From Isurus oxyrinchus (taxonomy: Eukaryota): DNA of 64,000 nt. The stretch spans positions 35,402,001-35,466,000 of the forward strand of contig JANJGN010000026.1 in the NCBI GenBank assembly GCA_026770705.1. The letters run 5' to 3'. This document shows, in pieces, positions 391-58,229 of the stretch. Position numbers and translations under genes: made by a program. Position 1 is the first letter of the stretch. Each line of letters begins with the position of its first letter. The notes below the pieces were generated by a model. That model ran no database searches. It saw only the letters and a program-made list of their open reading frames with translations, and was not told the DNA's origin.

Positions 391-858
391 ATGCGGCTAC
401 TCAGCATCTGGGCTGTGTGGACAGCGATTCTGACAGGTAAACGTGAAGGGAATACACTTCATCTTTTCTCTCTTTTCTCAGGCATGTTTTCAATCAGATT
501 TCAATAAGCTATCGGTCTTAACTTTACTGTTTTAATACATCTTTTCCAGGCGGGACTCATGGAGATTCTGTCACTCAGCCACTCTCATCAGATGTTAAGA
601 CCGAAGGCGAAGAGGTGACTTTGAAATGTAACTATGATACTACAAGTGACAGCTATACGTTATACTGGTACCGGCAACACCCAGACACACAGCCCCAGTT
701 TGTACTGTACAAGGATGATTATGGCAGTGAGAATAAAGCAGAATTTGCGAAAAGTCGTTTCTCTGTAAAGCTCCAGATCTCCACTAAATTCACCAGTTTA
801 ACCATCTCGAGTCTGCAGCTGACTGACGCCGCCGTCTATTACTGCGCTTTCTGGGACG
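391..858 (+). CDS. TCR alpha/delta V segment, apparently functional (leader exon 391-436, V exon 550-858)
   Basis: Leader MRLLSIWAVWTAILT with G|GTAAAC donor; TTCCAG acceptor at 549; open frame GGTHGDSVTQP...VTLKC...LYWYRQHP...DAAVYYCAFWD with C23/W41/C104; followed by RSS. Confidence 0.95.
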
Positions 859-897
859 CACAGTGATGAAAATCAGTCTCACCCCTGTACAAAAACT
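859..897 (+). promoter_or_regulatory. 23-RSS of the first V
   Basis: CACAGTG (859-865), 23-nt spacer, ACAAAAACT (889-897). Confidence 0.97.
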
Positions 898-1239
898 GCC
901 TATGCACTGTTAGTGGGAACTCCAGTCTGTTGGGGTCTGTGTCGAATCTCGGGTAGATGAAGTGACAATGCTCAGCGGCGTTGCCAGCCGCTCAGACACA
1001 TAGCGACGCGAAACCACATTAACCTCGGATCAAACTGCCGCCCAACTGTTCCCAGGAGCGGCCCAGAAAATCAAACAAACTGCAGAATCCGATCGGGCAG
1101 ACAGACATGGAAGGGAATTTGACCTGACGTCCGATCCTCATTCGTTGTTCATTATCACCAGTAAATCAAGGTTAATGGAGGATGAGGGAGACATCTGCAA
1201 ACAGAATGCAAACCGAGGGCGATCTATGCTTGGTTCAGT

Positions 1240-3779: not shown

Positions 3780-6075
3780 GAACAAAGAACAAACAACAAA
3801 GAAAAGTACAGCACAGAAACAGGCCCTTCGGCCTTCCAAGCCTGCGCCGATCATAGAGATCGTAACTAAAACATTTTGCACTTCCCGGGTCCGTATCTTT
3901 CTATTCCCATCCTATTCATGTATTTGTCAAGCTGCCTCTTAAACACCACTATTGTACATGCTTCCACCGCCTCCTCTGGCAGCGAATTCCAGACACTCAC
4001 TACCCTCTGCTTAAAAAAAACTTGCCCCGCACATATCCTCTATAGTTTTCTCCTCTCACCTTAAATCTATGTCCCCTATTAATTGAATCTTCCACCCTGG
4101 GAAAAAGCTTCTGACTATCTACTCTGCCCATGCCACTCATAATTTTGTAAACTTCTATCAAGTCGCCTCTCAATCTCCGTTGCTCTAGTGAGAACAATCC
4201 GAGTTTCTCCAAACTCTCCTCATAGCTAATAACCTCCAGAGCAGGCAGCATCCTGCTAAACCTCCTCTGTACCCTCTCCAACGCCTCTATATCCTTTGTT
4301 AATGTGGCGACCAGAATTACACGCAATATTCCAAGTGTGGCCTAATCAAGGTTCTATACAGCTGCAGCATGACTTCTCAGTTTTTATACTCAATACTCCT
4401 GCCAATGAAGGGAAACATGCCGTATGCCTTCCTGACTACCTTATCCACCTGCGTTGCCACTTTCAGTGATCCGTTGACATTTAGACCCAGATCCGTCTGC
4501 CCGTCGATGCACTTAAGAGTTCTGCCATTTGCTGTATAATTCCTGCCCGTATTAGACCTTCCAAAATGCATTACCTCACATTTGTCCGGAGTAAACTCCA
4601 TCTGCCATTTCTTCGCCCAAGTCTGCAACTGATTTATATGCCGTTGTATCATTTGACAATCCTTCTTTATTATCTGCAACTCTCCAACCTTAGTGTCTTC
4701 TGTAAATTTACTAATTAGACCAGTTACATATTCCTCCAAATCAGTTACGTATGCAACAAACAGCAAAGGTCCCAGCACTGATCCCTGCGGAACTCCACGA
4801 GTCGCAGCTCTCCATTCTGAAAAGCATCCTGCCAATGCTACCCTCTGGCTTCTATGACCAAGCCAATTCTGTATCCACCTTGCCAGCTTACCTTTGATCC
4901 CGTGCAACTTTACCTTCTGTATACGTCTGCCATGAGGGACCTTGTCAAAGGCCTTGCTGAAATCCATGTAGATAACATCCACTGCCCTTCCATCATCGAC
5001 CATCTTTGTCACTTTCTCGAAAAACTCGATCAAGTTAGTGAGACCCGACCTCCCTTTCACAAAACCATGCTGCCTCTCACTAATACGCCCATTTGCTTCC
5101 AAATGGTAGTAAATCCCGTCACAAAGAATCTTCTCCAATAATTTTCCTACCACTGATGTAAGGATCACCAGCCTGTAATTTCCTGGATTATCCCTGCTAC
5201 TCTTCTTAAACAATGGAACAACATTGGCCATTCTGCAGTCCTCTAGGACCTCTTCCGTAGCCAGTGAGGATACAAAGATTTCTGTCAAGGCCCCAGAAAT
5301 CTCCTCCCTTGCCTCCCTCAGTACTCTGGGGTAGATCCCATCTGGTCCTGGGGATTTATCCACCTTAATATTCTTCAACACGCCTAACACCTCCTCTTTT
5401 TTGATCTCCACATGATCCAGGCTATCTACACACTCTTCCCTAGGCAAATCGACTGCTAAGTCCTTCTCTTTGGTGAATACTGATGAGATGTATTCATTTA
5501 GTATCTCTCCCATTTCTTCTGGCTCCACACACAGATTCCCACCTCTGTCCCTGTGTGGGCCAACCCTTTCCCTGGCTACCTTCTTGCTTTTTACATATGT
5601 TTTAAAGGCCTTGGGGATTTTCCTTAATCCTAGTTGCCAGTGACTTTTCATGACCCCTTTTAGCCCTCCTGACTCCTTGCTTAAGTTTCTTAGTACTTTC
5701 TTTATATTCTCCAGGGTCTTCATCTGTTCCCAGCCTTTTAGCCCTTATGAATGCTTCCCTTTTCTTTTTGACTAATCTCACAATATCCATCGTTATCCAC
5801 GGTTCCTGAAACTTGCCATGCTTATCCTTCATCCTATCAGGAACTTGCCGGTCCTGAACTCTTATCAACTGACGTTTGAAAGCCCCCGACATGTCCATTG
5901 TTGATTTGCCCTCAAACATCCGCCTGCAGTCTAGATTCCTCAGCTCCTGTCTAATATTGCTCTAATTAGCCTTCCCCCAATTAAGCACCTTAACCCGATG
6001 ACTCCTGTTATCCTTATCCACTAGTACCTTGAAACCTATTGAATTATGGTCAGCTTTCCCGAAATGCTCCTCTAA
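3780..6075 (-). mobile_element. CR1-type LINE, 5'-truncated ORF2 (reverse transcriptase)
   Basis: ORF 4377-5723 with KSPGPDGIYP, VVPLFKK, QHGFVKGRS, DFSKAFDKVPH, GVPQGSVLGP; C-terminal LERVQRRF...RRLRGDLIEVYKI; frameshifts between ORFs. Confidence 0.93.
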
Positions 6076-8825: not shown

Positions 8826-10438
8826 CACAGCACAACAGCAAACGGCAAAGACGAATTGAAGGGCCACATCAATACTAAGGGAACGGTTTCATTATCTTTG
8901 TGTCAAACAGCAGATGCCATGACTGGGACATGTGAAAACATAGGCCCTGTCACCGAGCTCCAATACTCAGTGAACATCTCAGAGCTTCCAAGCGATTTTG
9001 GAGGTGGTAAAACAGAATTGACGGAGTTGGCGAGTAACGACAGTTCAGAGATATCCAGGAAAATTCACAACCCCTTCATTCTGAAAGATGCTCAGAACCT
9101 GAATCTTCGCCATTTCTTCCTGAATGACATAGGTAGAATATTTCGAAAGAAAGGAAGTAACCCTGGAAAACACGCTGACTCACCAAACCTGGATTCACTG
9201 TGCAATATCTATTCTCCTAATAATCTGGATTTGCAAGTCTGATGATGACCACGGAATCATTGCCAGTTGCAGTGAACAAACCCATATGTTTCACTAATGT
9301 GCTTTAGGGAGGGAAATCTGGCGCCTTTACCTGGTCTGGCCTACATCTGACTCCAGGCCGACATTTATGTGGTTGGCTCTTAAATGCCCTTGAACAAGGG
9401 CAATTAGAGCAGGACAATAAATGCTGGCCAACGTCCTACTAAGGAATAAAACAAATGTTAAAAACATCAATTTTTCCCCAGTCTCTTGGTGCGAAGAGTT
9501 TCCACCCGTGCAGTGGCCAACGAACACGAGGCAATGGAATTGATAAAAGCTAATCAGCACAGCTCAGAGCCAGGTTAAACATAGCAAGGGTTCAATTCCA
9601 ATCCCACATGATGGAATAATCGAATGCCGAGAACCATAAATGCTGCAAATCTGAAATAAAAGAACAGAACATTCTGGAAAAGTAAAGGATAGCTGGTTAG
9701 GATGCCTTTCAGTGGAGAGCTAACGTTTCAGATTGATGAAATTTTATCCCAACTGGAAATGCTGGAAGTGACGTAAGTCTTCTTCAATGATTTGGTGGGA
9801 TATAGTGTGTTTCATTGCATGGGACCTGGTTAACTTTTGCAGCCAGTGTGGGGTCCATGGCGTAAGGTGTTGGCGGACGATAGTTCCCATGGATAATTAA
9901 AGCAAACCTTGTGATTTCGTTTTGCAAAACATCAGATACCTTGTCTGGGGTCACAAGAACCAGGTAACATTCTCTGGAATACTGGGGTAAGAGCGGGACA
10001 GGAGGATTCTCTCGGTGTCCTGGGACCACATTCCACCTTTAACAAACACCACCCAATGCAAACACATGCACCGACCTCCCAGTTTATCACTGTGGGGAAA
10101 GGAATGCAACAGCACAACTGGCAGAAAGAAAAGCTCCCTTCCCCCACCCCTGTACCCCAGAGTATTGTGGGAGGGGCTTTCACATCCTGATCACAATCCA
10201 AATATAGAGTCAGAAAATTGCAGCCTCCTTTTATAAACCTGTCTCTTATTCACACAGCACTTAGCCACCTATCGGGGAACCATGCGGCCCATCAATGATC
10301 TCAGCGAAACTGCCCTGTGCAAATAAACTCGATCCCCCTAAAATATTTCAGTCCAGCTCTGAGGTCCGGTTTCCCAGTGCATCCAGGGCTGCAGTCTCCA
10401 GCTCCCCGTCATATAAACCCTCAGTTCCAGGCAGCAGA

Positions 10439-10921
10439 ATGATGGGAATCTTTCTTGTTTTCACCCTGTGTGTATGTTTACCCAGTGAGTACCAATCAAA
10501 CAAACCGACATTGTGTGGATTTAATAGTAAGCTGCCCGAGCCCATCCCAATTACAGACAATGTCTGGGGTTTAACCCCGTTCTGTGAATCTGCTGTGATG
10601 CTCCATTAAACTCTCTCTGTTTAATTTCCAGGCTATTTCAGTCAGTCATTGACACAGACCCCGGCAGCGGTGACCAGGAAGGAGTGTCAGTCTCTCACCA
10701 TTACCTGTGTTTTCTATGGTGGTTTTTACGCTCGACATTTGACGGGCGGGGATTTCTTCAGAAAAACCCAGACCGGGACAGAGCGGGAGCGGATCTCCAG
10801 CGGAGGAAGATTTGTTGAGTCGTTGAATAAAGCACAAAATACATTTTCGCTGGAAATTCGGGATGTGAGAGTTGAAGACACCGCCACCTATTTCTGTAAA
10901 GCTCAGTACGAGTACGAAGAA
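10439..10921 (+). CDS. NAR-TCR V segment, copy 1 (IgNAR-like V; leader 10439-10484, V exon 10632-10921), open frame
   Basis: TATA at ~10411; leader MMGIFLVFTLCVCLP with GTGAGT donor; SQSLTQTPAAVTRKECQSLTITC...ERISSGGRFVESLNKAQNTFSLEIRDVRVEDTATYFCKA resembles VNAR (short CDR2 region) and has a non-canonical FR1 Cys. Confidence 0.9.
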
Positions 10922-10959
10922 CACGGCGACGGGTCTCGGTTTCCCGCGATATAAAAACT
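10922..10959 (+). promoter_or_regulatory. V 3' RSS with 22-nt spacer
   Basis: CACGGCG (10922-10928), 22 nt, ATAAAAACT (10951-10959). Confidence 0.8.
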
Positions 10960-11287
10960 CTCACTGCAGATTATTACAGAATCAAATAAAAAAACGGAGT
11001 TAATCTGCAGTTAAACCCCCCACGGCTCCGCCTCACACCGCCTGTCCCACAGTCTAGTGTATAATGAGATTGGATTATTGCCGTTAACATCTTGAGTTTT
11101 ATAAATGTCGAGTGTGTGCGGATGGCGATGTCTTTGCCGGGATTGGTGTCAGTGAATGGGGATTGGGAATGACTAATCCCAGTTACAAACCTCTAACACC
11201 AGATGTGATCCTGGTCTAACAGCTGGAACCGGGAACCGCAGTCCCAGCTGTTTACCTAGTATCCCAACAGCGCACCAAGTCCCCAGG

Positions 11288-11360
11288 GGATTTCATGCTG
11301 ACTTGGAACACTGTGTGTTTGGATGGGGAAGTCACAGTGGAAGAGACTTGAGCAAATATC
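11288..11360 (+). other. NAR-TCR D segment (core 11316-11332 TGTTTGGATGGGGAAGT) flanked by 12/12 RSS
   Basis: GGATTTCAT-12-CACTGTG | D | CACAGTG-12-GCAAATATC. Confidence 0.85.
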
Positions 11361-11676
11361 TCTCCACAATCACAATATAAATTCTCCAGTCCCGGACAGT
11401 GAATTGTCGGGTTGATGTTATTGTTGCTATAATCTGGTTACATTTCATTGTAATTTCCACCATTCAGTTATCTTTCTTTAATCATTTTTCTCGGTTTATA
11501 TGAAGAGAACATTTCGTTCCTGGGACCATTTACTCAGAGCTCAGGGCCTCACAAAGAACAGTTTGAACAGACAGAGACTTTAAAATATTGAATATTGTTT
11601 ATTTATTTATATCCGCTGAATAATTGGGCAGTTTCTACTGTCTGATGATGATTCCCCAATAGTTTGAGTTGTCGGT

Positions 11677-11759
11677 GGTTGTTGTACCGGGGACACTGAG
11701 AGTGGTGTCACTGTGGTGGGTTACTAAATATTATTCTGTGGATGGACCCAGGAAAGCTG
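11677..11759 (+). pseudogene. NAR-TCR J segment, copy 1 (23-RSS; FR4 shortened by 15 nt)
   Basis: GGTTGTTGT-23-CACTGTG(11709-11715); coding WVTKYYSVDGPRKA G|GTAAT versus YVDGSGTVVTVTA in copy 2. Confidence 0.8.
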
Positions 11760-12639
11760 GTAATAACTCCAAACCTCGCCGGGTTACCGACTGTCCCTTG
11801 TAATGTTCACTGTCAGTTTATTATTGATATCGGTTGGGTTTGGGGGGATGTGGGAGTTGAAGGAATCTGGACCATTATTGGTTTAACGGGCACATTGGGG
11901 ACAACATCAACATCTCGGACTCTCACACTTTGAATCGCTTTTAATGAGAGCAGATTGTCAGCAATCCGGACTCCACTCCCGGTGTTAATTGTGACCGAGG
12001 GAGCTCTGCCTGTCCCTTAGAGCTGGGGAGCGGGGTGACAGATCTCTCTCCTGGGCAGCAGTTTGCAGTCTGAGCTGCACAATGTGAATGAGGAACCGGG
12101 TGAATAAACTCAACATAACTGCGGCCATTTCGGATACCTGACCCGGGAGTAAAACAAGCAAGTGACACAATGGACTTCAGATATAAGAGGTCCTGATGTG
12201 GGTCTACATGGAATTTTATTATTGGATAATCAGTGACTGAAATTAGTGACAATGCCCCCGCCGTTTGTTTCAATTGTCTTCAGAAAACCAATTACTTTCC
12301 TCCCTTTCTGACCTCAGACCGAAATGTGAAAGTTTGGAACTGCAGACACTTTATTATCTTGAATGTAGATGTTTGAGAGATGGGATTGCTGTAATTTTTC
12401 TGTATCCCTGATTACTGTTAATGGAAACAACAAAATGCAGTGAGATAGTGAGGATAATGCATTAATCTTATAAAGGAGAACAAGAACATAGGGAACAATT
12501 ATAAACTGGGGCCATGTTCATTTAGAACCAGCAAGAAATAGCTCAGCGAAAGGGGATGAAGGATTATTTGACCTCTGGGCGCCTTCCAAAGTACAATCCG
12601 ACCACGTGGTGGGTGAGCTTTATGGAGGGAAGGACTGAA

Positions 12640-13200
12640 ATAGACTGAAATGCTGTGTAACGTTTTGGTCTCATTACTGAAGAGAGAACCATCTGCTTTG
12701 GAAGGAGTGCAACAAAGCCTCACCAGACTGATTCCTAAGATGAAGAGGTTGTCCATTGTGAAATGATTTAGTAGTCTGGGCCTGTATTCCCTAGAGTTTA
12801 GGAGAATGAGAGGTGATCTAATGAAAACATATAATATTCTTCAGGGAACTTGACTGGGCAGATACTGGGTCGCAGTTTCTCCAGGCTGAGGAGTATAGAA
12901 CTCAGGGTCACAGCTTCAGAAGAAAGGGTCATCCATTAGAACTGAGAAACGGAAAATAATCTTGAGAAGAACTATTGTTGCGAACCTGTGGCATTCTGTA
13001 ACTCAGAGAGCGGTGGGTGTTCAGTATCACCGTGTATGCAAGGCAATATTCGACAGATTTTTGGATACTAACAGAGTCAGGGGATATTGGGAGAATGCGG
13101 GAATGTGATGTTGAGGTGGAAAATCAGCAACCATATTACTGAATGGCTGAGCAGGTTTGAAAGGTGATCTGGCGCCTCCTGCTTCTATTCGATTCTCTAC
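12640..13200 (+). mobile_element. CR1 LINE 3' fragment in the J-supporting V intron (inverted counterpart at ~25560-26090)
   Basis: AGAATGAGAGGTGATCTAATGAAAACATATAA-type CR1 ORF2 tail at the same relative position in both cassettes. Confidence 0.75.
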
Positions 13201-14608
13201 TTTGATTTCCTATAGGCCTGAGAAAAGAAATCAGCAGCATTCCACATCTCTCTGGGAAGTTGAAGCCGGCAGGGCCTCTTTTTTCTGGACAAAAGGGAAA
13301 CACTGGGAAAATTAATAGAAACCTTTCAAACAATGAGCGGTTTTAGTCTGGTGAAATTGTTTATTTGTGGCTGAGTCCAAAGCAATGGACTATCAAAATA
13401 TTAACAGGACAAAGAAGAATATTAAGACAAATAAATTTTAACAAAGACAAGTCAGAGTATGGAACTTGCTGTCCAAGGGAGTGCGTGCAGATATTACTGA
13501 TATATTTACGGCACAGACCGACCCAGGGAGCTGGATGGAAATGGTCAGTTAAGTTTCGGTGGGGATTAGGTTGGAATTGAGTCTATGCACAGGTTGAATG
13601 GCCCATTCCTCTTTTGCGTTCTTTTTCCTCCATAATGTAAAATTGAGGGAAAACTCCGCCCAGTGAACCCGGGAAAGAATCAGTTAACGTACGGAAAGAA
13701 TTGAAATTGTTAGAGAGCCGGAAGAGGCAGTTCCCAGTGAGTAACAGTAAAACCACTGCGGAAACTGAACAGACTGAACCCAACAGACAACTGAGAGAGT
13801 TTGGGACAAGTTCCCACGATTGCAAAAAGGGCAAACAGCACAAAGTAAATGTGAAAAAAGGAAATGTGAAATAAAGTAAATAAAATAAAATTAATTGTAA
13901 ATATTTCAAATGAACTAAACTACAGAAAATTGGACCCTATTGATAAAACTTAGAGAAATAGAGCACCAGGCCGAGAGAAATTCCCGAGCACTTATAAGCC
14001 GCAGGAAATGATTGACCTTTGGCCACTGATGTTTACTCTCGCTTTGGCCCAATTGGTGCTGATGATTCCCATCGGTTTGTGTTGGGTCTTGCTGTGATGC
14101 CACACAGCTGTATTTCTCTCTAACAAACATTTTTTTTTGGAAATCGGTTGCCTCATTGATCATAAAATATTCCCTCGGGTTTGTGTCTCACTAGGGATAA
14201 TACACACAGGGATGTAATTTTATTCATAGAATTATCCGGCCCGTCGTGTATGCGCCGACGCATTAGAAGTGCAAACCAATTGTTCCCACGGCCCATTAAC
14301 TTTCTCCATCGCTCTATATTTTTATTTACATTTCCAGTACAGATCCATTACCTGCTTCAAAGTTACAATGGAATCTGTTCCCACCACCAATTCAAACGGT
14401 GCATTATTCATGAGGAGAATTCGCTATGGAAAAAAAAAATCACTTCATTCCCTACTTTATCATAGTTTAATAACAGTGAATACGGTTCAAACAGGCTTCA
14501 AAAAAATAAAATTACCACAAAAAGCAGAGCTATTCAAGCGATCGACAATTTCTCCTGGACAAACAGTGGATAAACAAAAAGATAATGTTCATTTTTTTGA
14601 TTCTCCAG

Positions 14609-14951
14609 ATTCCAGTTCCATGATTTCCCGAGATCTGCCAGTACAAACCTCTGCTGCCTGTGACACCGTTACTTTAAACTGCGAATATTCAGGGTTCTGT
14701 CCGTACACAGTACACTGGTATCGTCTGTCGCCCGGAAAGGCTCCGGAATATCTGCTTCAGAGACACACTTCAGGAGAGGAGAATAAAGAAAACGCCGTCG
14801 AGGGGAGAATTTCTGCTTCTATCGAATCTGTCGAGAAAATCAGCCGGTTAAAGATCTCCAATCTACAATGGAGCAACTCCGCTGTCTTACTGTGCACTGA
14901 GTCGGCGTGCAGCACAGTGATACAGAGAATGGAGAGAGCTGTAGAAAAGCC
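14609..14951 (+). other. Leaderless supporting TCR-delta V of NAR-TCR, copy 1, with 23-RSS (YYC changed to LLC by a 2-nt deletion)
   Basis: Acceptor TTCTCCAG at 14608, no leader exon seen; DSSSMISRD...VTLNCEYSGFCPYTVHWYR...SAVLLC with CDR1 Cys; CACAGTG(14913-14919)-23-AGAAAAGCC. Confidence 0.88.
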
Positions 14952-16777
14952 TGAACATGGTGGGATTACAGAAGGACCAACAGTAGCTGAATCTCCTTCA
15001 ACACTCGTGCAATAGCCTACGGGATGGTACCAACTGCTCTCAACACACAGCCCCCCTCCCTCCTCCCCACCCCGTGATGTTAACCTGGGTCCACCCGACA
15101 TCACCACCCCCACAGCCTCCCGGCCCGGGACCCTTACCCCCTTTCCCATTCTGTCAATATCGCCCTGTTTTCTCCTCCTGGATATTCAGGGATTTGTACC
15201 CTCCCCAATGCACCCAGCACCACATAATAAAGTCACGTCCTGTGTATTCACCGGCCTGATCCATCTCCCAGACAAGGGAGCAGCTTTGCCCAGAGATGGG
15301 GAGGGGGTGGGTAACATGGATCTTGTGATCGGGTTTAACCACGTGCAACACACGGAACAACGGGACAAGGTTGATTGTGGAAACCAGTAATTCGGTCATT
15401 GTGGATCATTCCACATCTTTTATTTATTTAATTTTCATTCTCTTTCCCTCCTCTGAACTGACTTAGATGTTAAGCCACGGAGTTAATTCATGTGTCAGTG
15501 ATGTAAACGGGATTTGGGGTGAGGAGCTGTCGTTGCGGGTCGGATGGGGGTGGGTGCGAGGGAGGGGGTGCCGATTGATTGGATCTATCCCAGAAAGTAG
15601 ATGCCAAACCTTGTGCATCGCGATTCCAATGGTCCCCCCCCCCACTCCCCCAAGGCTTTAACAGGCCTTTAATCACCAAGTCAGGCATTATTGAATGTGT
15701 GTCCGTGTATGCGTGTGTGTCTGTGTGTGCGTGTGCGTGTGTGTGTGTGTGTCTGTCTGTCTGTCTGTCAGTGTGTGTATGCACTAGCGGGGGAAGTTTC
15801 ACTTGAGCTGGGGGGTTGTGCACTGCACTGGTTAAGGGCTCCAGTCTCGAAATATTCGAAGCTTCAATGTCCCCAAAGTACAGGGTCAGTCAGGGTTCGG
15901 TGTTGGGGTCGTGGGATGGTACAGCCTGGACGGTGGGAACCATTAAGGACATAATAAATAGGAGCAGCATTGAGCAGTTCAATAAGATCATGACTGAGAT
16001 TTGACCTCAATGTCCTCTTGGCCTGTCCCAATATCATTGATCCCTTTAGCGCCACCTCCCAAAATATCTATCCATCACCAACTGAAAATCCAACAATCAC
16101 CATTTTGAATATGGGCAACTGCTGAACATCTTGAACCCTCTGGGCTGGAGAATTGCAAAGGCCTGCAGCCCTCTGAGTGAAGGGATATCTCAACTTAAGC
16201 CAAAATGGCCGACTTTTAACCCTGAGACGAGGACCAGAGTATTTAAAGTGCCATTTGAAGGTGTTAGTTGTTTTGTGTGTGTATGCGTGTGCCTGTGTCT
16301 GAATTCTAATGTTAAGGAGACTCCGTGAAATTAGAAGTCATGTTTATGTTGCATTGTGTAATGTGGCCCAAAACCCTATGCTCCATTAACCCAGGCAGCC
16401 ATATATTGCATCAAATATCGCAGTGTCGAGGAACAGTTGCCGATGGTGGGGTGGGGGATGTACATTGTCTTTGCTTCCAATTCTACTGAAACCCCACTTG
16501 CAGCATATTTGTAATGCGTTGAGAATTTCGTTTGAAAGTAAAAAAGAGGATTCTCCCCACCCTCTGCCTCGCTTGGATTTGTCAATTGGGAAATCGCGGC
16601 CATGATTTCTTATGGTGCGAAATGGAAGGAGAGCTGCGAATCATCTCCAAGATTGCAGGGTTTGAGGATTAACTGTTTAACCCAAGCAAACTGCAGAAAA
16701 TAACATTATGTGGTGGGACTTGGTGATCTGGCCAGAAGAGTGCCGAATGCCATTTGAAGTTTATTGGCGTGTCATTG

Positions 16778-16866
16778 AGTTTTCAGATGGAGTTTTGTCA
16801 TTGTGTATTCGAGTGTTTTTAGACCATTAATATTCGGAACAGGAACCAAACTGACCGAGGAACTTA
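16778..16866 (+). other. Isolated TCR J segment (J-delta/alpha-like) with 12-RSS
   Basis: AGTTTTCAG-12-CATTGTG(16799-16805); YSSVFRPLIFGTGTKLTEEL with FGxG motif; phase-1 donor A|GTGAGT. Confidence 0.85.
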
Positions 16867-22497: not shown

Positions 22498-22835
22498 TGT
22501 ATTTGTACAGATGTCTCCATGCTCTGTATCACCGCGCTATGCGTCGACTCAGTGCACAGTAATACACAGCGGAGTCGCTCAGTTGTAGTTTGGAGATCAT
22601 TAACTGGTTACTTTTCTCGGCCGAATTGATAGAAGCAGAAATTTTCCCCTGGCAGCGTTTTCTTTCTTCTCCTCTCCTGAAATGTGTCGCTCAAGCAGGT
22701 ATTCCTGTCCTGGAGATTGACAGTACCAGTGTACTGTGTACCGACAGAACCCTGAGTATTCACAGTTTAAAGTAACGGGGTCACCGGCAGCAGAGGCTTG
22801 GAAATGCGGACTCTGGGATACCAGAGAACTGGAAT
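22498..22835 (-). pseudogene. Supporting TCR-delta V, copy 2 (pseudogene)
   Basis: Acceptor TACAG before 22835; DSSSLVSQSPHFQ...LNCEYSGFCRYTVHWYC; 6-nt deletion in FR2 and 1-nt frameshift in FR3; DSAVYYCALS; heptamer mutated to CGCGGTG-23-ACAAATACA. Confidence 0.9.
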
Positions 22836-26989: not shown

Positions 26990-27081
26990 CGGCTGTGACA
27001 GTCACCACCGTCCCGGATCCATCCACATAATCTTATTTTCAGCACAGTGATCCCGCTCTCAGTCTCTCCGGTACAACAATC
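26990..27081 (-). other. NAR-TCR J segment, copy 2, with 23-RSS
   Basis: GATTGTTGT-23-CACTGTG; ...DYVDGSGTVVTVTA G|GTAAGT (VNAR-type DGxG motif); in-frame TGA and TAA within the first 10 nt. Confidence 0.88.
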
Positions 27082-27394
27082 ATTGACACCTCAAACTGCA
27101 GGGAAATCATCATCAGACAGTAGAAACTGCCCAGTTATTGAGCGGATTAAAATAAGTGTAAAATATTCAATGTTTCGAAGCTTCTGTCGGTTCAAACTGT
27201 TCTTTGTGAGGCCCTGAGCTCTGAGTAAATGGCCCAGGGAAGGAGATGTTTGCTTCATATAAACCGAGAAATTATCAAAGAAAGATAACTGAATGGTGGA
27301 AATTACAAGAAATATAACCAGATTACAGTGATAATAACATCAACCCGACAATTTCCTATCCGGGCCCAGAGAATTTAAACAGTGATCATACAGA

Positions 27395-27905
27395 GATATT
27401 TGCTCCGGTCTGCCCCACTCTGACTGTACCGCATGCTGTACATATACAGAGCTTTACAGTAATAGGTGGTGGTGTTTCCAACTCTCAGATCCCTAATTTC
27501 CAGCGAAAATGTATTTTCTGCTTTATTCACCGACACAACAAATCTCCCCTCGCTGGAGATCCGCTCCCGGTCTGGGTTTGTCTGAAGAAATCCCCACCCG
27601 TCAAAGGACGAGAGAAAAAGCCACCATAGAAAACGCAGGTGATGGTGAGAGACTGACGCTCCTTCCTGGTCACCGCTGCCGGGGTCTGTACCACTGACTG
27701 ACTGAAAGAGCCTGGAAATTAAACAGAGAGAGTTTAATGGACCATCAGAGCCGAACCACAGAGCGGGGTCAAAACCCCGGACATTGTCTGGAGTTGGGAT
27801 GGACTCGGGCAGCTTTATATTAAACAAACACAATGTCGGTTTGTTTGATCGGTACTCACGGGGTAAACGGACACACAGGGTGAAAAGAAAGAGAACTCCA
27901 ATCGT
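27395..27905 (-). pseudogene. NAR-TCR V copy 2, fused to D and the D 3' 12-RSS (pseudogene)
   Basis: Leader 27905-27860 with ATG ATG changed to ACG ATT; V exon from 27711; KEC changed to KER; 10-nt frameshifting deletion; YYCKALYMYSMRYS then CAGAGTG-12-GCAAATATC and flank homologous to the copy-1 D 3' flank. Confidence 0.88.
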
Positions 27906-50478: not shown

Positions 50479-50870
50479 TCATTGACATGAATTAACGGTG
50501 TCCATCAGTGCAAGAGAAATATTCACAAAACTCGGTTTACCGCTGGATTTATCAACCGTTCTGTTGATGATCTTCAAGGGAATCGCTTCATGTCCCACCA
50601 CACAGGAGTAAGAAGCGCCGCTGGCCCACTCCTCCGCTGCAATGGATAACAGGCTGTACATGAAGAAGGAGCGATTGCCGTTCTCCGCCACCACCTCGGT
50701 GTTCTTGTAGTTTCCGGGATTCACCGGCTTGTCATTGACGGTCCACTTGACGAAGATCTCTCGGGGGGAGAAACCTCTCACTAAGCAGCTGAGGGAGACG
50801 AACCTCTGAGCGGAGACATCTTCTGCCGAGGGCAGGAGGACAGACACGGATGGTTCCTGCGGATTTTTGT
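50479..50870 (-). CDS. IGHM: IgM CH4 plus secretory tail
   Basis: [43 protein letters not shown]...[43 protein letters not shown]; internal G|GTAAA donor at 50541 for TM splicing; tail has an NIS sequon and penultimate Cys; AATAAA at ~50437-50451. Confidence 0.97.
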
Positions 50871-51577
50871 CTGCAGAAAATGTACAATAAATGTCAATAA
50901 ACTGGATAATTTCGGAGACAATGAAACCACTGGTTACGGTGAGGGAAGTGTTTTTGAGTTGAATAGTAAAGGTTTACATTATCCACTTCTAGGAAATATA
51001 TCGCCATTCCTTTACTGTCGCTGAGGCAAAATCCTGGAACTCCCTCCCTGACAACACTGTGCATGTACCTACACCACAGGGATTGCAGCGATTCAAGAAG
51101 TCAGCACACCACCACCTTCTCAAAGGCAATTAGGGATGGACAATAAACTCTGGCCCAGCCAGCGACGCACACATCCCATTAATTAATGAATAAAAATCTT
51201 TGGGATCTGATCGGTTTTCCAGCTCGGAGCAGAGGTGGATACAATTCTTTTCCCTGAGAACTTATGGGGTTGGACTAGAAAGTTTCTCAAAGTTTACAGC
51301 ACAGAACAGGCCATTCGGCCCAACTGGTCTGTGTTGGTGTTTAAGCTCCACACCAGGCTCCTCCCATCTTTCTTCATCGAAATCCAAAAGCACAGCCTTC
51401 AATTCATTGCTCATTCATCTACTTATCAATTTCCTCCTTGAAGTCTGCAGGCCCAGAGCGTTTAGCTAGTGGAATTGCCAATCCGGGTAGACCATGAACA
51501 CACTGAATAGTAAATATTGACCCTTACACTGGAAATAGACACAATGACTCACTTATTGTTTCAATCTCACCGCTCAC

Positions 51578-51886
51578 CTTGTTCCTTGTGGATGGAACTC
51601 CTTAAAGGAGTCGGCAGATCCTGATTGCTCACCACGCAGTAGAACTCAGCCCCACTCAGCCAGGCTTGTGTCGAGATGTTTACGTTGCTGACCACGCTGC
51701 CGGGATGCTCTCCCGGTTGGATGGCAATCTCTGATTTCAAAGGCTTCTTTTCTTGGGTCCAGGACACGAGTACTGGTTGATGAGCATCAGAAACAATGCA
51801 GGTTAAGGTCACGGTCGCTTCCAGCAAGACCTGTTCTATTGGCGGTGGCAGTAGAGTAATTGTGGCATCTCTGCAGTTGGAACATT
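51578..51886 (-). CDS. IGHM: IgM CH3
   Basis: [30 protein letters not shown]...W...[22 protein letters not shown]; AG/GT boundaries, phase 1. Confidence 0.95.
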
Positions 51887-52238
51887 CTGTGAGACAGAAA
51901 TGAAAATCAACCAAAGTTTCACCATGAGAATCAGGACAGCAGTATTTCGTCTTCACTCTCCAGAGGACATTCGACATATCAACCTCTAACTATCGTCTGT
52001 AATCGTCTTTACACAATGCAAAACCAGCTTGGTCTGTGTAAATTGTTCTCATAATTTCAGTCGTTTAGCCCTGGAAACATTCTAGCAAACCTGTGTTGCC
52101 CCAGTCCCAATACAAATACACCATTCCCGGGCCCTGGAATGCAGTACTGAATGCCGCTTTATGAATAGGGTGGATGCACTTTCCAGCACTTTATTCCGAA
52201 GCTATTACCAGTTACTTTAATGGGTTTGTATCTCTTAC

Positions 52239-52526
52239 CAGACCCGGTGGTGTTTCGACTTAGGGTGACCCCTTGATGAGTGACCTGACAGGTATAGACC
52301 GCGCCGGTGAACAATTCCCCAGCGGAGACTTTCAGCCGACTGGTCACCGAGAAGTTCCCGTTCATTTCAAAGACGGGAGAGGTGACAATTCCTGAATTGA
52401 TGGGTTGTCCATTCTTCAGCCACTTCACGGTGATTGGCTTTGGATGGAAATCGATGACTGAACAGACTACGGTATCTTCCCGGCAGCTTATGGTTAGGAG
52501 AACAGCTGGAGGGGGCATGTCAGTAC
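52239..52526 (-). CDS. IGHM: IgM CH2
   Basis: [39 protein letters not shown]...[20 protein letters not shown]; AG/GT boundaries. Confidence 0.93.
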
Positions 52527-52739
52527 CTTAAAAAAACACAGGTTAAACATTTCTTGCAGAAGAAATTGATAACAGATACAATGAGGTCCTATATTTTAAC
52601 AGGCTTTTTCCGTTAACAGACAATAACCTGGATTTTTCAGGGATCAAAACTATGCAGAGCACTATAAATGCGTTACAACCAAGGCCCCATACAGGTTAGT
52701 CACAGCGTTTCTGTTTCTTAGAGGTTCCTCAACACTTAC

Positions 52740-53036
52740 ATGGCATTTCAATGCTCTTGTCTGAGCCGCTGTGTCGAACCTCACAGTTGATATCGCATCC
52801 CCCCTCTGACTCGGTGATGGTTAACTGGCTGCTCAGGGTCAAGGTTCCCTTCTGGTTTCTCACTGACGGGTATGTCTGAAATCCAGTGGTGATCTGCTGC
52901 CCATCTTTCTTCCAGATCAGGCTGGTGATTTCTGGGGAGTAATCCATCGCCAAACAGCCGTAGGTGATGGAGCCGTCGGTGTTGTGTTGCTGACAGGAGG
53001 AGACCAGGCTGTAGAGAGTGGGCGAAGACGGTGTCG
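52740..53036 (-). CDS. IGHM: IgM CH1
   Basis: [45 protein letters not shown]...[17 protein letters not shown]; Cys at the expected light-chain-linking position. Confidence 0.95.
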
Positions 53037-53399
53037 CTGGGAAAGAATGGCCGATCGAACACGTTAGACTCTGTGATTTGTGATCATTAAGTAAGCAAAC
53101 AACTCAAAAATTGACGATTAGTATAAACATATCCAAATATATTCCAACTAAAACCCACACCTACATTTGATCATTTATTATTTCCATCATTTGGTGACCC
53201 TCACCTGTCGGTTCCCTCTTTCGAAACCCACACCTCTTTATCCACTTCTATCCAATTTCTGGAAGGCCCCTCCCCTCTCCACGTCCCCCAAAACAAAGAA
53301 TATCAACGGCCCTTCGAAAGTACCTTTGTAATGGTACCTATATAATGACCATAGAACTCTAAATTGAATACTAGTAACAGTTAGTAAGACATTTTCCAA

Positions 53400-54930: not shown

Positions 54931-55454
54931 CTCATTAAGGCCAAAATATTTGTCCAGCTTCTCTGCCCATTTCCTTATTTGCCATTTTTACGGGCTTTTC
55001 CAATCCATGTCACGTGGCTGGACTGTGGCCCCCCCCGAAGCCCCTCTATATGGCCCCCGGAGCCGTTGTTCAAAATGCTGGTAAGGCGGGTAAGTGGAAT
55101 TGAAGATTTCAGTGAGGAGCTGCTCCTCCATTCACAGGCTGGTCTTCTACCCCGTTAGCTGCTGATAGGCTGAATAGCAGATCAGCAGTAAAAGTGGGAG
55201 ACAAACAGGTTTGTGATTGGAGAGGCAGCGAACACCCGCTGGAGAAAGGCGCAGGGAAATGGGGGGAAGCGCACAGAGACATTATCTCCCTTCTATCCCA
55301 GGCACTGAGTGCCTTTCCCTTGGAATGGAAAGGATTTCAGGAGGGGGAGAGACAATGAAGGAGAGAGGGAGAGAGAGAGAGTGGGGCCCAGGGCATCTGG
55401 AGCCTCTGCTCACAACTGCTTTCGCCTGGCTCTCCCTGCTATAAACCGGCTCTC

Positions 55455-57060
55455 AGCCCTTTCCCCCCCTCTGCCTCTCCGCTCTCCCACTTCCCTGCCC
55501 TTTCCCCCACCCATCTCTCTGCCCATTCCCCCTCCCGCCTCTGTGCCCTTTCCCCCTCCCACCTCTCTGCCCATTCCCTCTCCCGCCCCTCTGCCCTTTC
55601 CCCTCTCTGCCTCTCCGCTCTCCCACTTCCCTGCCCTTTCCTCCACCCACCTCTCTGCCCATTCCCCCTCCCGCCTCCCTGTCCTTTCCCCCTCCCGCCT
55701 CTCTGTCATTCCCCCTCCCACCTGTCTGCCCTTTCCCCCTCCCACCTCTCTGCACACCCCACCCCCTGCTTCTCTGCATTGCCGCTTTGCCCTTCCCCAC
55801 CCACCGCTCTGTCCTTCACCCCCACCTCTCTTCCCTTTCCCTCCTGCCTCTCTACCCTTTCCCCCCTTGCATCTGTGCCCTTTCCCCCCTCCTCTCTGCC
55901 CTTCCCCCCACCACCTCTCTGCCCTTACCTCCCGCCTCTCTGCCCTTTATCCGTCACCTCTCTGCCCTTTCTCCCCCAGCTCTCTACGCACACTCCACTG
56001 CTCTTTGTGCTTTCTTCTGGCTCTCTTACCTTTTCCACTTGTCCTTTGCCTGTTCTCCCAGCTTGCTGCCCTTTCCATCCCCTGCCTCTCTGCCCTTTCT
56101 TGCCCCCCCCCCGCCTCTCTGCCCTTTCTCCCCTCTGTCTCTCTGCTCTCCCGCCTCCCTGCCCTTTCCCCCACTCACCTCTGTGCTCTTTCTCCTTCCC
56201 ACCTCTCAGCCCTTACCTCCCGCCTCTCTGCCCTTACCCCCTCGCCTCTCTGCTCTCCCGCCTCCCTGCCCTTTCCCCCACTCACCTCTGTGCTCTTTCT
56301 CCCTCCTGCCTCTCTGCCCTTACCCCCTCGCCTCTCTGGCCTTTTCCAAGCTCACTGCCCTTCCCGTTGACTCTCTGCCCTTTCCGTCACCTCTCTGCCC
56401 TTCCCCCCTCTGCCTCTCTGCCCTTCCCCCTCTGTCTCTTTGCCCACCCTCCTCTCTGTCCTCCCCACCTCTGCCTTTCTACCCTGCCTCCTCTCTGCCC
56501 TTTCCCCTTCCCACCTCTCTGCCCTTTCCCCCACCCACCTCTCTGTCCTTTACCCCTACTGCCTTACTGCCCTCCCTCCTCTCTGCCTTTCCCCCACCCA
56601 CCTTCCTGCCCTTTCCCCCACTGCCTCTCTGCCATTTCGCCTCGTCACTCTGCCCGCGCCACCCCCAGTTTCTCTGCCCTGTCACCCCTCCACCTCTCTG
56701 CCCTCCCGCCTCTCTGCCCTTTCCCCCTCCCACCTCTCTGCTCTTCCCCCCCACTTCTCTGCTTTTTCTCGTCCAGCTCTCTGCACTTAATGCAGGACTC
56801 CCTGTGCTTTCATCCGGCTCTCTGACCTTTCCCACTTGCTCTCTGCCTGTTCCCTGGATTGCTGACCTTTCCCCCTGCTCATTGACCTTTGCCCCATCCC
56901 AATGCACTTTCCGCTGGATCCCTGCCCTTTTCCACCTCCCGGCTCTCTACCCTTCCCCCCCAACGCCCCCTCCCCTGGCTCTGTGCCATTTCCCTCGCCT
57001 CCCTGCCCTTTCCCCCAGGCTCTCCGAGCATTCCCCCCGCCTCACTGCCCTTTCTAATAA
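55455..57060 (-). repeat. Purine/G-rich degenerate tandem array (GGGAAAGGGCAGAGAGG on the IgM sense strand)
   Basis: CCTCTCTGCCCTTTCCCC units on the + strand over ~1.6 kb. Confidence 0.9.
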
Positions 57061-58017
57061 AACTCATCGCTCCCTTCAGCCATGCTCCACTTTCCAGCAC
57101 TGCTAGGCCTCAGGCCTCGCTTCCAGGTCTCTCTTCCCCACAGTTCCCACCTTCCCACACATCGATTTATGAAAAGTGATCGAGTGAGTGAGCGTGTGCA
57201 TGATTGACAAAGTGAGAGTGGCTGAGTGACAGAGTGAGGGCGGGTAGCTGGGTGAGTGAGGATGCGTAGGTGAGTGAGGGTGGGTGATGAGTGGGCGTGG
57301 GTGAGGGTGTGAGATTGAGTACCTGTGAGTGAGTGAGGGTTGGCGAGTGAGGGTGATTGAGTGTGAGTGAGGGTGAGTGAGTGAGATTGAGTGAGGGTGA
57401 GCGATTGTGGGTAGTGAGGGTGAGTGAGTGAGTGAGGGTGAGTGATTTTGGGTAGTGAGGGTGCCCAGGTGCTGCAGGCTCATCAAGGCAATGTTTCTCT
57501 GGATGATTTTCTGCTCCGACTCAGCTTTCCGTTGCCAGTTGTCCACAGCCGAGCTGGGGGCTCCTCCATTCGGCTCCACCACCTCCACCTCCTCCTCTTC
57601 CTCTCCATAGATCCTGTCCTGATTCTCCATATTGATCAGCTTTCAGTAACACCGGCTGTGTAAAGTCTGGCAGCAGTGTAGATCACTGGCCGGCTGCTTT
57701 AATGCTGATGCCTTTCTTTGAGAAACCCGTGTCAGTGCGTGAATAGGCAGACTGAGGGGGCTGGAGGGGAAGGTTACAGCAAAACCAAGATGGGCCGTGC
57801 AGGCACTTGCACCAAGTGTGCACCAGTATTGGGGATCCAGGTGGCTGTGGTCTCCACCCTCCCTTTTTCTTGTTTCTTTGTGTTTGGTTCAACACTTGGA
57901 AATTCTGCACATATATAGTGATGTCACCTGTGTAATTTCATTTTACACAAAAAGGCATCGGAAATGGAACAATGAACATGCCTGCAGCTTAACGGATCTT
58001 CTTTCTGAAATTAGCAT

Positions 58018-58229
58018 NNNNNNNNNNNNNNNNNNNNNNNNNNNNNNNNNNNNNNNNNNNNNNNNNNNNNNNNNNNNNNNNNNNNNNNNNNNNNNNNNNN
58101 NNNNNNNNNNNNNNNNNNNNNNNNNNNNNNNNNNNNNNNNNNNNNNNNNNNNNNNNNNNNNNNNNNNNNNNNNNNNNNNNNNNNNNNNNNNNNNNNNNNN
58201 NNNNNNNNNNNNNNNNNNNNNNNNNNNNN
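58018..58229. other. Assembly gap (212 N), followed by GT/GA microsatellite to ~59010
   Basis: Run of n. Confidence 0.99.

What the first reader, a model, noticed from the sequence alone, without database searches (positions are those of the whole stretch)
27395..27460. Germline-joined V-D in a NAR-TCR cassette: apparent fossil RAG coding joint in a T-cell receptor locus
Seen: copy 1 reads V (...TGT AAA GCT CAG TAC GAG TAC GAA GAA), 22-RSS, interval, 12-RSS, D (TGTTTGGATGGGGAAGT), CACAGTG-12-GCAAATATC. Copy 2 reads ...TGT AAA GCT CTG TAT ATG TAC AGC ATG CGG TAC AGT straight into CAGAGTG-12-GCAAATATC and the homologous D-J flank. The lost segment corresponds to the V-RSS through the D 5' RSS (10922-11315, 394 bp). 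Copy 2 keeps 27 nt of coding ends versus 35 nt (18 V + 17 D) in copy 1, i.e. modest trimming, and ATGCGGTACAGT resembles the D end ATGGGGAAGT. Established: germline-joined Ig genes (VD, VDJ, VJ) occur in cartilaginous fishes, and opossum TCR-mu has a pre-joined V. Inference: RAG acted in the germline on a TCR-associated cassette. I do not recall this being described for NAR-TCR. The retained leader intron argues against retroposition.
Basis: partly seen in the sequence, partly recalled or inferred. Interest (0 to 1): 0.9.

Follow-up and report, generated by a model that had tools for sequence, protein, structure and literature searches.

The report
Germline V-D fusion in dead NAR-TCR cassette
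One of two shark NAR-TCR gene cassettes in this window has its V and D segments already fused in inherited DNA, most likely by the RAG recombinase acting in germ cells, but the cassette is now a broken pseudogene, so it is a fossil and not a working receptor gene.

Summary
Copy 2 (minus strand, 27905 to 26990) is homologous to copy 1 (plus strand, 10439 to 11759). It lacks exactly the 394 bp from the V 23-RSS through the D 5' 12-RSS. Its V end runs 36 nt from the Cys codon straight into the homologous D 3' 12-RSS.

Both breakpoints lie on the coding side of the two RSS borders. A random deletion would do this about 1.4e-4 of the time. The leader intron is kept.

Short contigs from two other samples cross the identical junction, so a somatic or assembly origin is very unlikely.

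RAG-mediated germline V-to-D joining is the best reading (about 0.72), but it is inferred. No closer unjoined paralog was available. The claimed likeness of the junction tail to the copy 1 D is not above chance.

- no leader ATG
- a 10-nt frameshift in V
- the a-b loop Cys lost
- a CAGAGTG heptamer
- a frameshifted supporting V with a ruined RSS

Copy 1 also looks defective.

Germline joining is well known for shark Ig genes. I found no paper describing it for NAR-TCR. Unchecked first-stage notes of this scan report similar joins elsewhere in this genome.

Interest is moderate: a new member of a known kind.

The parts
27860..27905 (-). Copy 2 leader exon remnant. The two ATG codons of copy 1 read ACG ATT here, and no other ATG follows the TATA-like box.
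27712..27859 (-). Copy 2 leader intron, retained (GTGAGT donor, CAG acceptor), 88% identical to the copy 1 intron.
27423..27711 (-). Copy 2 fused V-D exon. The body is a NAR-type V with a 10-nt deletion between CGGGA direct repeats near 27565-27568. That deletion shifts the frame between FR2 and FR3. The a-b loop Cys is changed to Arg.
27423..27458 (-). The junction: 36 nt from the Cys codon to the heptamer border. The first 21 nt align with the copy 1 V end. The 15-nt tail AGCATGCGGTACAGT holds whatever remains of the V end, the D and any added bases.
27395..27422 (-). Copy 2 D 3' 12-RSS: heptamer CAGAGTG (third base mutated), 12-nt spacer, nonamer GCAAATATC identical to copy 1.
27043..27081 (-). 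Copy 2 J 23-RSS (GATTGTTGT nonamer, 23-nt spacer, CACTGTG).
26990..27042 (-). Copy 2 NAR J. It encodes ..DYVDGSGTVVTVTA, then a phase-1 GTAAGT donor. Two in-frame stops lie at its 5' end.
22537..22835 (-). Copy 2 leaderless supporting V. It has a 6-nt deletion and a 1-nt deletion (frameshift). The heptamer is degraded to CGCGGTG (22530-22536).
10439..10484 (+). Copy 1 leader exon with ATG ATG.
10632..10921 (+). Copy 1 NAR-type V exon, open. It has the a-b loop Cys (KECQSL) and FFRK in place of WYRK.
10922..11315 (+). The 394 bp absent from copy 2: the V 22/23-RSS (10922-10959), the interval, and the D 5' 12-RSS (11288-11315).
11316..11360 (+). Copy 1 D (17 nt, 11316-11332) and its 3' 12-RSS (11333-11360).
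11677..11759 (+). Copy 1 J 23-RSS (11677-11715) and J (11716-11759). The J is 15 nt shorter than the copy 2 J and reads ..DGPRKA, without the GxGT..VTV motif.
14609..14951 (+). Copy 1 leaderless supporting V (14609-14912) and its 23-RSS (14913-14951). It has the CDR1 Cys and a phase-1 acceptor. A 2-nt deletion turns YYC into LLC.

Best explanation
Copy 2 is a NAR-TCR cassette of the form leader, NAR V, D, J, then a leaderless supporting V. In it, the V 23-RSS and the D 5' 12-RSS were cut and the two coding ends joined in a germ-line cell by ordinary deletional V(D)J recombination. The 394-bp interval was lost as a signal-joint circle.

The product was a VD-J cassette, still legal under the 12/23 rule: a VD end with a 12-RSS facing a J with a 23-RSS. 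It was then inherited.

The cassette is now dead. The order of joining and inactivation is unknown.

Shown: the structure, the breakpoints, the retained intron, the same junction in other samples, and the disabling lesions. Inferred: that RAG made the cut, and that it happened in germ cells.
For: 1. The alignment gap equals the stretch from the V heptamer to the D 5' heptamer (10922-11315). Homology is 88-90% before the gap and 85% after it.
2. Both breakpoints lie on the coding side. The 5' one is within the last 6 nt of V and the 3' one within the 17-nt D. Both RSSs are removed whole. A random deletion within the cassette would do this about 1.4e-4 of the time.
3. The 13-15 nt ahead of the D 3' heptamer match copy 1 at only 5 positions, although the flanks are 85-90% identical. 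The binomial probability is 1.6e-4 to 8e-6. This is what end processing or added bases would give. A clean deletion would not.
4. The leader intron is kept, so there was no cDNA route.
5. Contigs of two other samples cross the junction without a gap. X3 record 14 covers 27395-27556 with 1 mismatch. X6 record 20 covers 27279-27524 with 4 mismatches and carries a different organism label. No insertion or joint is listed at the junction. Somatic joins differ from clone to clone and would not be the assembled form in three data sets.
6. The same process is documented for shark Ig genes, where it is attributed to RAG-like activity with hairpin intermediates (PMC2193156).
7. Copy 1 shows usable RSSs of the right spacer classes: 22/23 at V, 12 on both sides of D, 23 at J.
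Against: - Only one split relative is available, and it is 10-15% diverged. The progenitor coding ends, the trimming and any P/N bases cannot be defined.
- The tail's likeness to the copy 1 D is at chance level.
- The cassette is a pseudogene, so a deletion of any kind would have been tolerated.
- All runs are Logan contigs of unknown tissue, and no raw reads were available.
- The independence of X3 from the assembly's individual is likely (different sample and study) but not proven.
Confidence: 0.72

Rival explanations
1. Ordinary deletion in a decaying pseudogene. A break-repair or replication-slippage event, with about 10-15 nt of filler, removed some 400 bp and happened to end near the two RSS borders.
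For: - Copy 2 carries other small deletions. One is a 10-nt deletion between CGGGA direct repeats, which is typical of slippage.
- The supporting V has a 6-nt and a 1-nt deletion.
- The junction tail is not demonstrably D-derived. It partly repeats the preceding bases (ATGTACAG / ATGCGGTACAG), as templated filler can.
Against: - Both endpoints would have to fall within a few bases of the two RSS/coding borders, on the coding sides. The chance is about 1.4e-4.
- I see no microhomology in copy 1 that reproduces the junction. For example, GAAG occurs in both V and D, but a deletion between the two copies would give a 26-nt end, not 36.
Confidence: 0.15
2. Non-RAG recombination between the V heptamer and the D 3' heptamer (both begin with CAC), within one cassette or between two. 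This would delete the D altogether, and the 36 nt would be nothing more than a long V end.
For: - Both heptamers start with CAC.
- V ends vary among relatives. Translations of P0002 and P0003 end differently.
Against: - In the three V ends that can be read through the heptamer, the distance from Cys to heptamer is 27 nt: copy 1, P0001 and P0004. That is 9 nt less than here.
- Three bases of homology are very little for such an event.
Confidence: 0.06
3. The joined form is ancestral, and the copy 1 lineage gained the RSS-flanked interval by insertion of a signal-ended fragment.
For: RAG can transpose signal-ended DNA. Lee et al. raised and tested this question for shark light chains.
Against: - No 3-5 bp target-site duplication flanks the interval in copy 1. 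It reads ..GAAGAA before and TGTTTGG.. after.
- The relatives P0001 and P0004 show the split V end.
- The nurse shark NAR-TCR V domain is reported to be made by its own VDJ rearrangement (PMC1845163).
Confidence: 0.03
4. Somatic rearrangement or an assembly error captured in the reference.
For: The tissue of origin of the assembly and of the runs is unknown.
Against: - The identical junction stands in contigs from two other samples and studies, one of them a different haplotype with 4 mismatches in 246 nt.
- No alternative split form or joint is listed at this place (tables 4 and 5).
Confidence: 0.02

Closest known systems
Germline-joined immunoglobulin genes of cartilaginous fishes (VD-J, VD-DJ and VDJ heavy-chain clusters; fused VJ light chains; Lee et al. 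2000, PMC2193156; review PMC5192425)
   Same: - It is a mini-cluster type cassette in a shark.
- RSSs and intervening DNA are lost at the coding borders, and the leader intron is kept.
- A partial VD-J state is a known outcome.
- It is inherited.
   Different: - The cassette is a NAR-TCR unit feeding a TCR-delta type chain, not an Ig cluster with its own C exons.
- This copy is a pseudogene.
- The junction signature (P bases, trimming) could not be established here as it was for the NS4 genes.
NAR-TCR (doubly rearranging TCR-delta of cartilaginous fishes; Criscitiello et al. 2006, as described in PMC1845163 and PMC12227049)
   Same: - The V is NAR-type, with a leader, an a-b loop Cys and no Trp in the WYRK motif.
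- It has its own D and J.
- The J has a phase-1 donor.
- The supporting V is leaderless and has a CDR1 Cys.
- It sits in the TCR alpha/delta and IgH complex.
   Different: - The described genes rearrange V, D and J somatically. Here V and D are already fused.
- Copy 2 has lost the start codon, the reading frame and the a-b loop Cys.
TCR-mu of marsupials, with a germline-joined V exon (PMC7615758, PMC2275272)
   Same: It is a two-V-domain TCR chain in which one V has been joined in the germ line.
   Different: - From my own knowledge of that literature, the TCR-mu pre-joined V is the C-proximal domain, is fully joined and is expressed.
- Here the membrane-distal NAR V is only V-D joined, and it is dead.
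Germline-integrated rearranged TCR alpha and beta genes of channel catfish (PMC6170632)
   Same: Rearranged TCR segments are present in inherited DNA of a fish.
   Different: - The catfish sequences are reported as complete V(D)J rearrangements that are expressed. I read only the abstract.
- This one is a partial join in a NAR-TCR cassette with no sign of expression.

Membership tests
NAR-TCR cassette | N-terminal V of the NAR type with its own leader exon | tested here: met
   The best solved relatives of the copy 1 V are VNARs, with E down to 4.9e-18. Pfam gives V-set. Copy 1 has a leader with ATG. Copy 2 has the homologous leader exon and intron but no ATG.
NAR-TCR cassette | Cys in the a-b loop and no Trp in the WYRK motif (features listed in PMC1845163) | tested here: met
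   Copy 1 reads KECQSL and DFFRK. Copy 2 reads KERQSL, with the Cys lost, and DFFRQ. The feature is met in copy 1 and degraded in copy 2.
NAR-TCR cassette | Own D and J with RSSs obeying the 12/23 rule | tested here: met
   Copy 1 has V 22/23-RSS, D with 12-RSS on both sides, and J 23-RSS. Copy 2 has VD with a 12-RSS and J with a 23-RSS.
NAR-TCR cassette | J spliced to a leaderless supporting TCR-delta V that carries a CDR1 Cys | tested here: met
   There are phase-1 donors after both J segments. A phase-1 acceptor lies at 14609 with no leader exon. CDR1 reads SGFCPY (copy 1) and SGFCRY (copy 2), and a 23-RSS follows the V. Assignment to delta rather than to another V type was not resolved, because the PDB hits are dominated by antibodies.
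NAR-TCR cassette | Expressed as a three-domain delta chain | not tested
   No listed holder is on record as RNA. The lesions make it unlikely for copy 2.
RAG-mediated germline-joined antigen receptor gene | Both RSSs and the interval are absent, with coding ends retained up to the heptamer borders | tested here: met
RAG-mediated germline-joined antigen receptor gene | Intron retained (not a processed copy) | tested here: met
   The leader intron at 27712-27859 is 88% identical to that of copy 1.
RAG-mediated germline-joined antigen receptor gene | Present in germ-line or non-lymphoid DNA of several individuals | tested here: inconclusive
   The same junction appears in contigs of X3 and X6, which are different samples and studies from the best holder X1. 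Tissue is unknown and raw reads were not available.
RAG-mediated germline-joined antigen receptor gene | Junction signature (trimming, P bases) relative to the nearest split gene | tested here: inconclusive
   There is a net loss of 8 nt against copy 1, and a GCATGC palindrome lies in the tail. The only split relative is too diverged, and the tail-to-D similarity is at chance.
RAG-mediated germline-joined antigen receptor gene | Phylogenetic derivation from split genes | not testable with these tools
The protein searches returned four V relatives and nothing further.
TCR-mu-like pre-joined supporting V | The joined V is the C-proximal domain, is fully joined and is open | tested here: not met
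   Here the joined V is the N-terminal NAR V. It is only V-D joined, is frameshifted and lacks a start codon.

The most novel reading that the evidence does not exclude
NAR-TCR cassettes in this shark are repeated targets of RAG activity in germ cells. This would give a series of VD-J and VDJ pre-joined NAR V exons, some still functional, as a shark parallel to the route that produced the invariant V of marsupial TCR-mu. This dead cassette would be one dated record of that process. The only support beyond this window is unchecked first-stage notes from other parts of the genome.
Probability: 0.3. Interest if true: 0.7.

Novelty: new member of a known kind. Interest (0 to 1): 0.45.

Why it matters
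Germline joining is the main evidence that RAG still reshapes inherited antigen-receptor genes in cartilaginous fishes. So far that evidence comes from Ig clusters.

A join inside a NAR-TCR cassette would extend it to a TCR-linked unit in the combined TCR alpha/delta and IgH complex. It would also give a concrete intermediate for how a rearranging V domain can become a fixed one, as in TCR-mu.

This copy is a pseudogene. Its value is therefore as a marker of the process and as a datable event, not as a receptor.

Tried and rejected
- **D-likeness of the junction tail.** Local alignment against the copy 1 D gave shuffle p = 0.23, and 11% of the 17-mers in the copy 1 region (window 10000-13000) scored as well. 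I dropped it as evidence.
- **Other sources of the tail in the window.** There was only the self match and one 3-mismatch hit, which is at the chance level.
- **More cassettes for a closer split paralog.**
  - The window holds only these two NAR V copies.
  - Protein searches with the copy 1 V and with the copy 2 FR3-junction stretch found 4 and 2 relatives, all split or uninformative.
  - A by-sequence look-up in the scan's notes was blank.
- **Coding constraint.** V exon identity (90%) is the same as intron identity (88%) and close to the D-J interval (85%). There is no sign of selection on the pair.
- **RNA evidence.** No listed holder is on record as RNA.
- **Literature.** Six full-text searches found no description of a germline-joined NAR-TCR. 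PMC1458790 and PMC7909615 are not held, and the elephant shark supplement is not held. Absence from the literature is therefore not proven.
- **Supporting V type.** The PDB search returned mainly antibody VH chains and did not settle TCR-delta identity.

Full report
**What is in the sequence**

The window holds two homologous cassettes in convergent orientation: 10043-14970 on the plus strand and 28284-22478 on the minus strand.

Copy 1 has the full layout:
- leader exon with ATG ATG (10439-10484) and intron
- V exon (10632-10921)
- V RSS: CACGGCG, 22-nt spacer, ATAAAAACT (10922-10959)
- D 5' 12-RSS (11288-11315)
- a 17-nt D (11316-11332)
- D 3' 12-RSS (11333-11360)
- J 23-RSS (11677-11715)
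- J (11716-11759) with a phase-1 donor
- about 2.9 kb further on, a leaderless V exon with a phase-1 acceptor (14609-14912) and a 23-RSS (14913-14951)

The first V is of the NAR type.
- Its best solved relatives are VNARs, with E down to 4.9e-18.
- It has the a-b loop Cys.
- It has FFRK where other V domains have WYRK.
- The downstream V has the CDR1 Cys.

These are the features listed for NAR-TCR V and its supporting V in PMC1845163.

The setting also fits.
- A TCR alpha/delta type V with a canonical 23-RSS lies at about 560-868.
- Four IgM constant exons lie on the minus strand at 50479-53060.

By C-mu4 identity the animal is a shark. It is 93% identical to a Carcharhinus plumbeus fragment and 84% to Chiloscyllium punctatum.

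**The observation**

The alignment of the two copies shows one large gap in copy 2, equal to copy 1 positions 10922-11315. These 394 bp are exactly the V RSS, the interval and the D 5' RSS.

Copy 2 runs for 36 nt from its Cys codon (27458) to 27423. It then enters CAGAGTG-12-GCAAATATC (27422-27395) and the homologous D-J flank.

Identity to copy 1 by region:

| Region | Identity |
|---|---|
| leader intron | 88% |
| V body | 90% |
| D-J interval | 85% |
| V end | 74% |
| stretch aligned to the D | 5 of 13 positions |

**Is it a RAG coding joint?**

The positional argument is strong. The 5' breakpoint lies within the last 6 nt of V and the 3' breakpoint within the 17-nt D. Both are on the coding side, and both RSSs are removed whole. 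Two random breakpoints in the 1.3-kb cassette would land this way about 1.4e-4 of the time.

The low identity of the last 13-15 nt is itself informative. The flanks are 85-90% identical, and the binomial probability of so few matches is 1.6e-4 to 8e-6. A clean deletion would leave flank-level identity up to the breakpoints. Processed ends with added bases would not.

The tail contains a GCATGC palindrome, which is compatible with P bases. It also partly repeats the bases before it. Neither feature can be interpreted without the progenitor.

The retained intron excludes a cDNA route.

The result, a VD end with a 12-RSS facing a J with a 23-RSS, is a legal intermediate. It is the same VD-J state known from shark IgM clusters (PMC5192425).

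Lee et al. set out the reference criteria for germline joining by RAG-like activity (PMC2193156):
- a junction compared with the closest split gene
- presence in non-lymphoid DNA of many individuals
- no target-site duplication in the split genes

I could test the last criterion here, and it is met: copy 1 has no such duplication. The second is partly met. The first I could not test.

**Germline or somatic?**

All available runs are Logan contigs, with coded names and unknown tissue. Two contigs cross the junction without a gap:
- X3 record 14: 162 nt, 27395-27556, 1 mismatch. It is from a sample and study different from the best holder.
- X6 record 20: 246 nt, 27279-27524, 4 mismatches. It carries another organism label.

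No insertion or joint is listed at the junction in any of the four runs.

Somatic V-D joints differ from cell to cell and would not be the assembled form in three data sets. I therefore take the join to be inherited. The depth figures are inflated by paralogs laid at 90% likeness, and I did not use them.

Copy 2 is dead throughout.
- The leader has ACG ATT in place of ATG ATG, with no other start codon.
- A 10-nt deletion between CGGGA direct repeats shifts the frame between FR2 and FR3.
- The a-b loop Cys is Arg.
- The D 3' heptamer has G at its critical third position.
- The J has two in-frame stops at its 5' end.
- The supporting V has a frameshift, and its heptamer reads CGCGGTG.

Copy 1 is not healthy either.
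- Its J has lost 15 nt and with them the GxGT..VTV motif.
- Its supporting V has a 2-nt deletion that turns YYC into LLC.

The whole inverted pair looks like a decaying segment. Exon and intron have diverged equally.

**Rivals**

- *An ordinary deletion with filler in a pseudogene* is the main alternative (about 0.15). The cassette does carry slippage-type deletions, but the coincidence of both endpoints with the RSS borders argues against it.
- *Recombination between the two CAC heptamers*, with a long V end (about 0.06), conflicts with the 27-nt V ends of copy 1, P0001 and P0004.
- *Insertion into the copy 1 lineage* (about 0.03) lacks a target-site duplication.
- *A somatic or assembly origin* (about 0.02) is contradicted.

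**Comparison with what is known, and novelty**

Related cases are established:
- germline joining in shark Ig genes
- a germline-joined V in marsupial TCR-mu (PMC7615758)
- rearranged TCR genes in the catfish germ line (PMC6170632, abstract only)

Six full-text searches found no description of a germline-joined NAR-TCR. The primary NAR-TCR genomic papers are not in the library, so I cannot exclude a prior report.

First-stage notes of this scan report similar V-D and V-D-J joins in NAR-TCR cassettes elsewhere in the same genome. None of those listed shows a follow-up, and I could not read those sequences. I did not count them as evidence.

I class this as a new member of a known kind, of moderate interest. 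It is a credible fossil of germline recombination in a TCR-linked cassette, but it has no present function.

**Limits**

- Only contigs were available, not raw reads.
- The rest of the genome was out of reach.

Noticed in passing
window 11716-11759 and 14609-14912: Copy 1, the 'intact' cassette, also looks non-functional. Its J has a 15-nt in-frame loss that removes the GxGT..VTV motif and reads ..DGPRKA. Its supporting V has a 2-nt deletion just before the second Cys, reading SAVLLC instead of SAVYYC.
   Followed up: partly
window 50479-53060 (minus strand): A complete set of IgM constant exons, C-mu1 to C-mu4 with the secretory tail, lies about 22 kb from the NAR-TCR cassette. C-mu4 is 93% identical to a sandbar shark fragment. 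[quoted passage not shown] The VH-D-J part was not looked for.
   Followed up: partly
window ~560-906 (plus strand): A TCR alpha/delta type V exon (..YWYRQ..AVYYCAF) with a canonical CACAGTG-23-ACAAAAACT RSS. It appears open.
   Followed up: partly
window ~16790-16866 (plus strand): A TCR-type J (..FGTGTKLT..) with a GTGAGT donor lies 1.9 kb behind the copy 1 supporting V. Its RSS looks poor.
   Followed up: no
window 27565-27568 (copy 2) = 10774-10783 (copy 1): The 10-nt frameshifting deletion in the copy 2 V lies between CGGGA direct repeats. Contigs of paralogs that still carry the 10 nt appear as loose ends at this spot in runs X1 and X3.
   Followed up: partly
window 27423-27445 (minus strand): The junction contains a near-repeat (ATGTACAG, then ATGCGGTACAG) and a GCATGC palindrome. 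It could reflect P bases, templated filler or chance, and it is unexplained.
   Followed up: partly
window 4377-5723 (minus strand): A 448-aa ORF with a reverse transcriptase domain (RVT_1, E 6.8e-29), presumably a LINE-type retroelement. Related fragments lie at 34.0-35.2 kb, 44.4-45.0 kb and 53.4-54.6 kb.
   Followed up: no
window 55300-57100 and 58018-58229: A GC-rich tandem-repeat block with long spurious Pro/Ser/Leu ORFs, followed by a 212-N gap.
   Followed up: no
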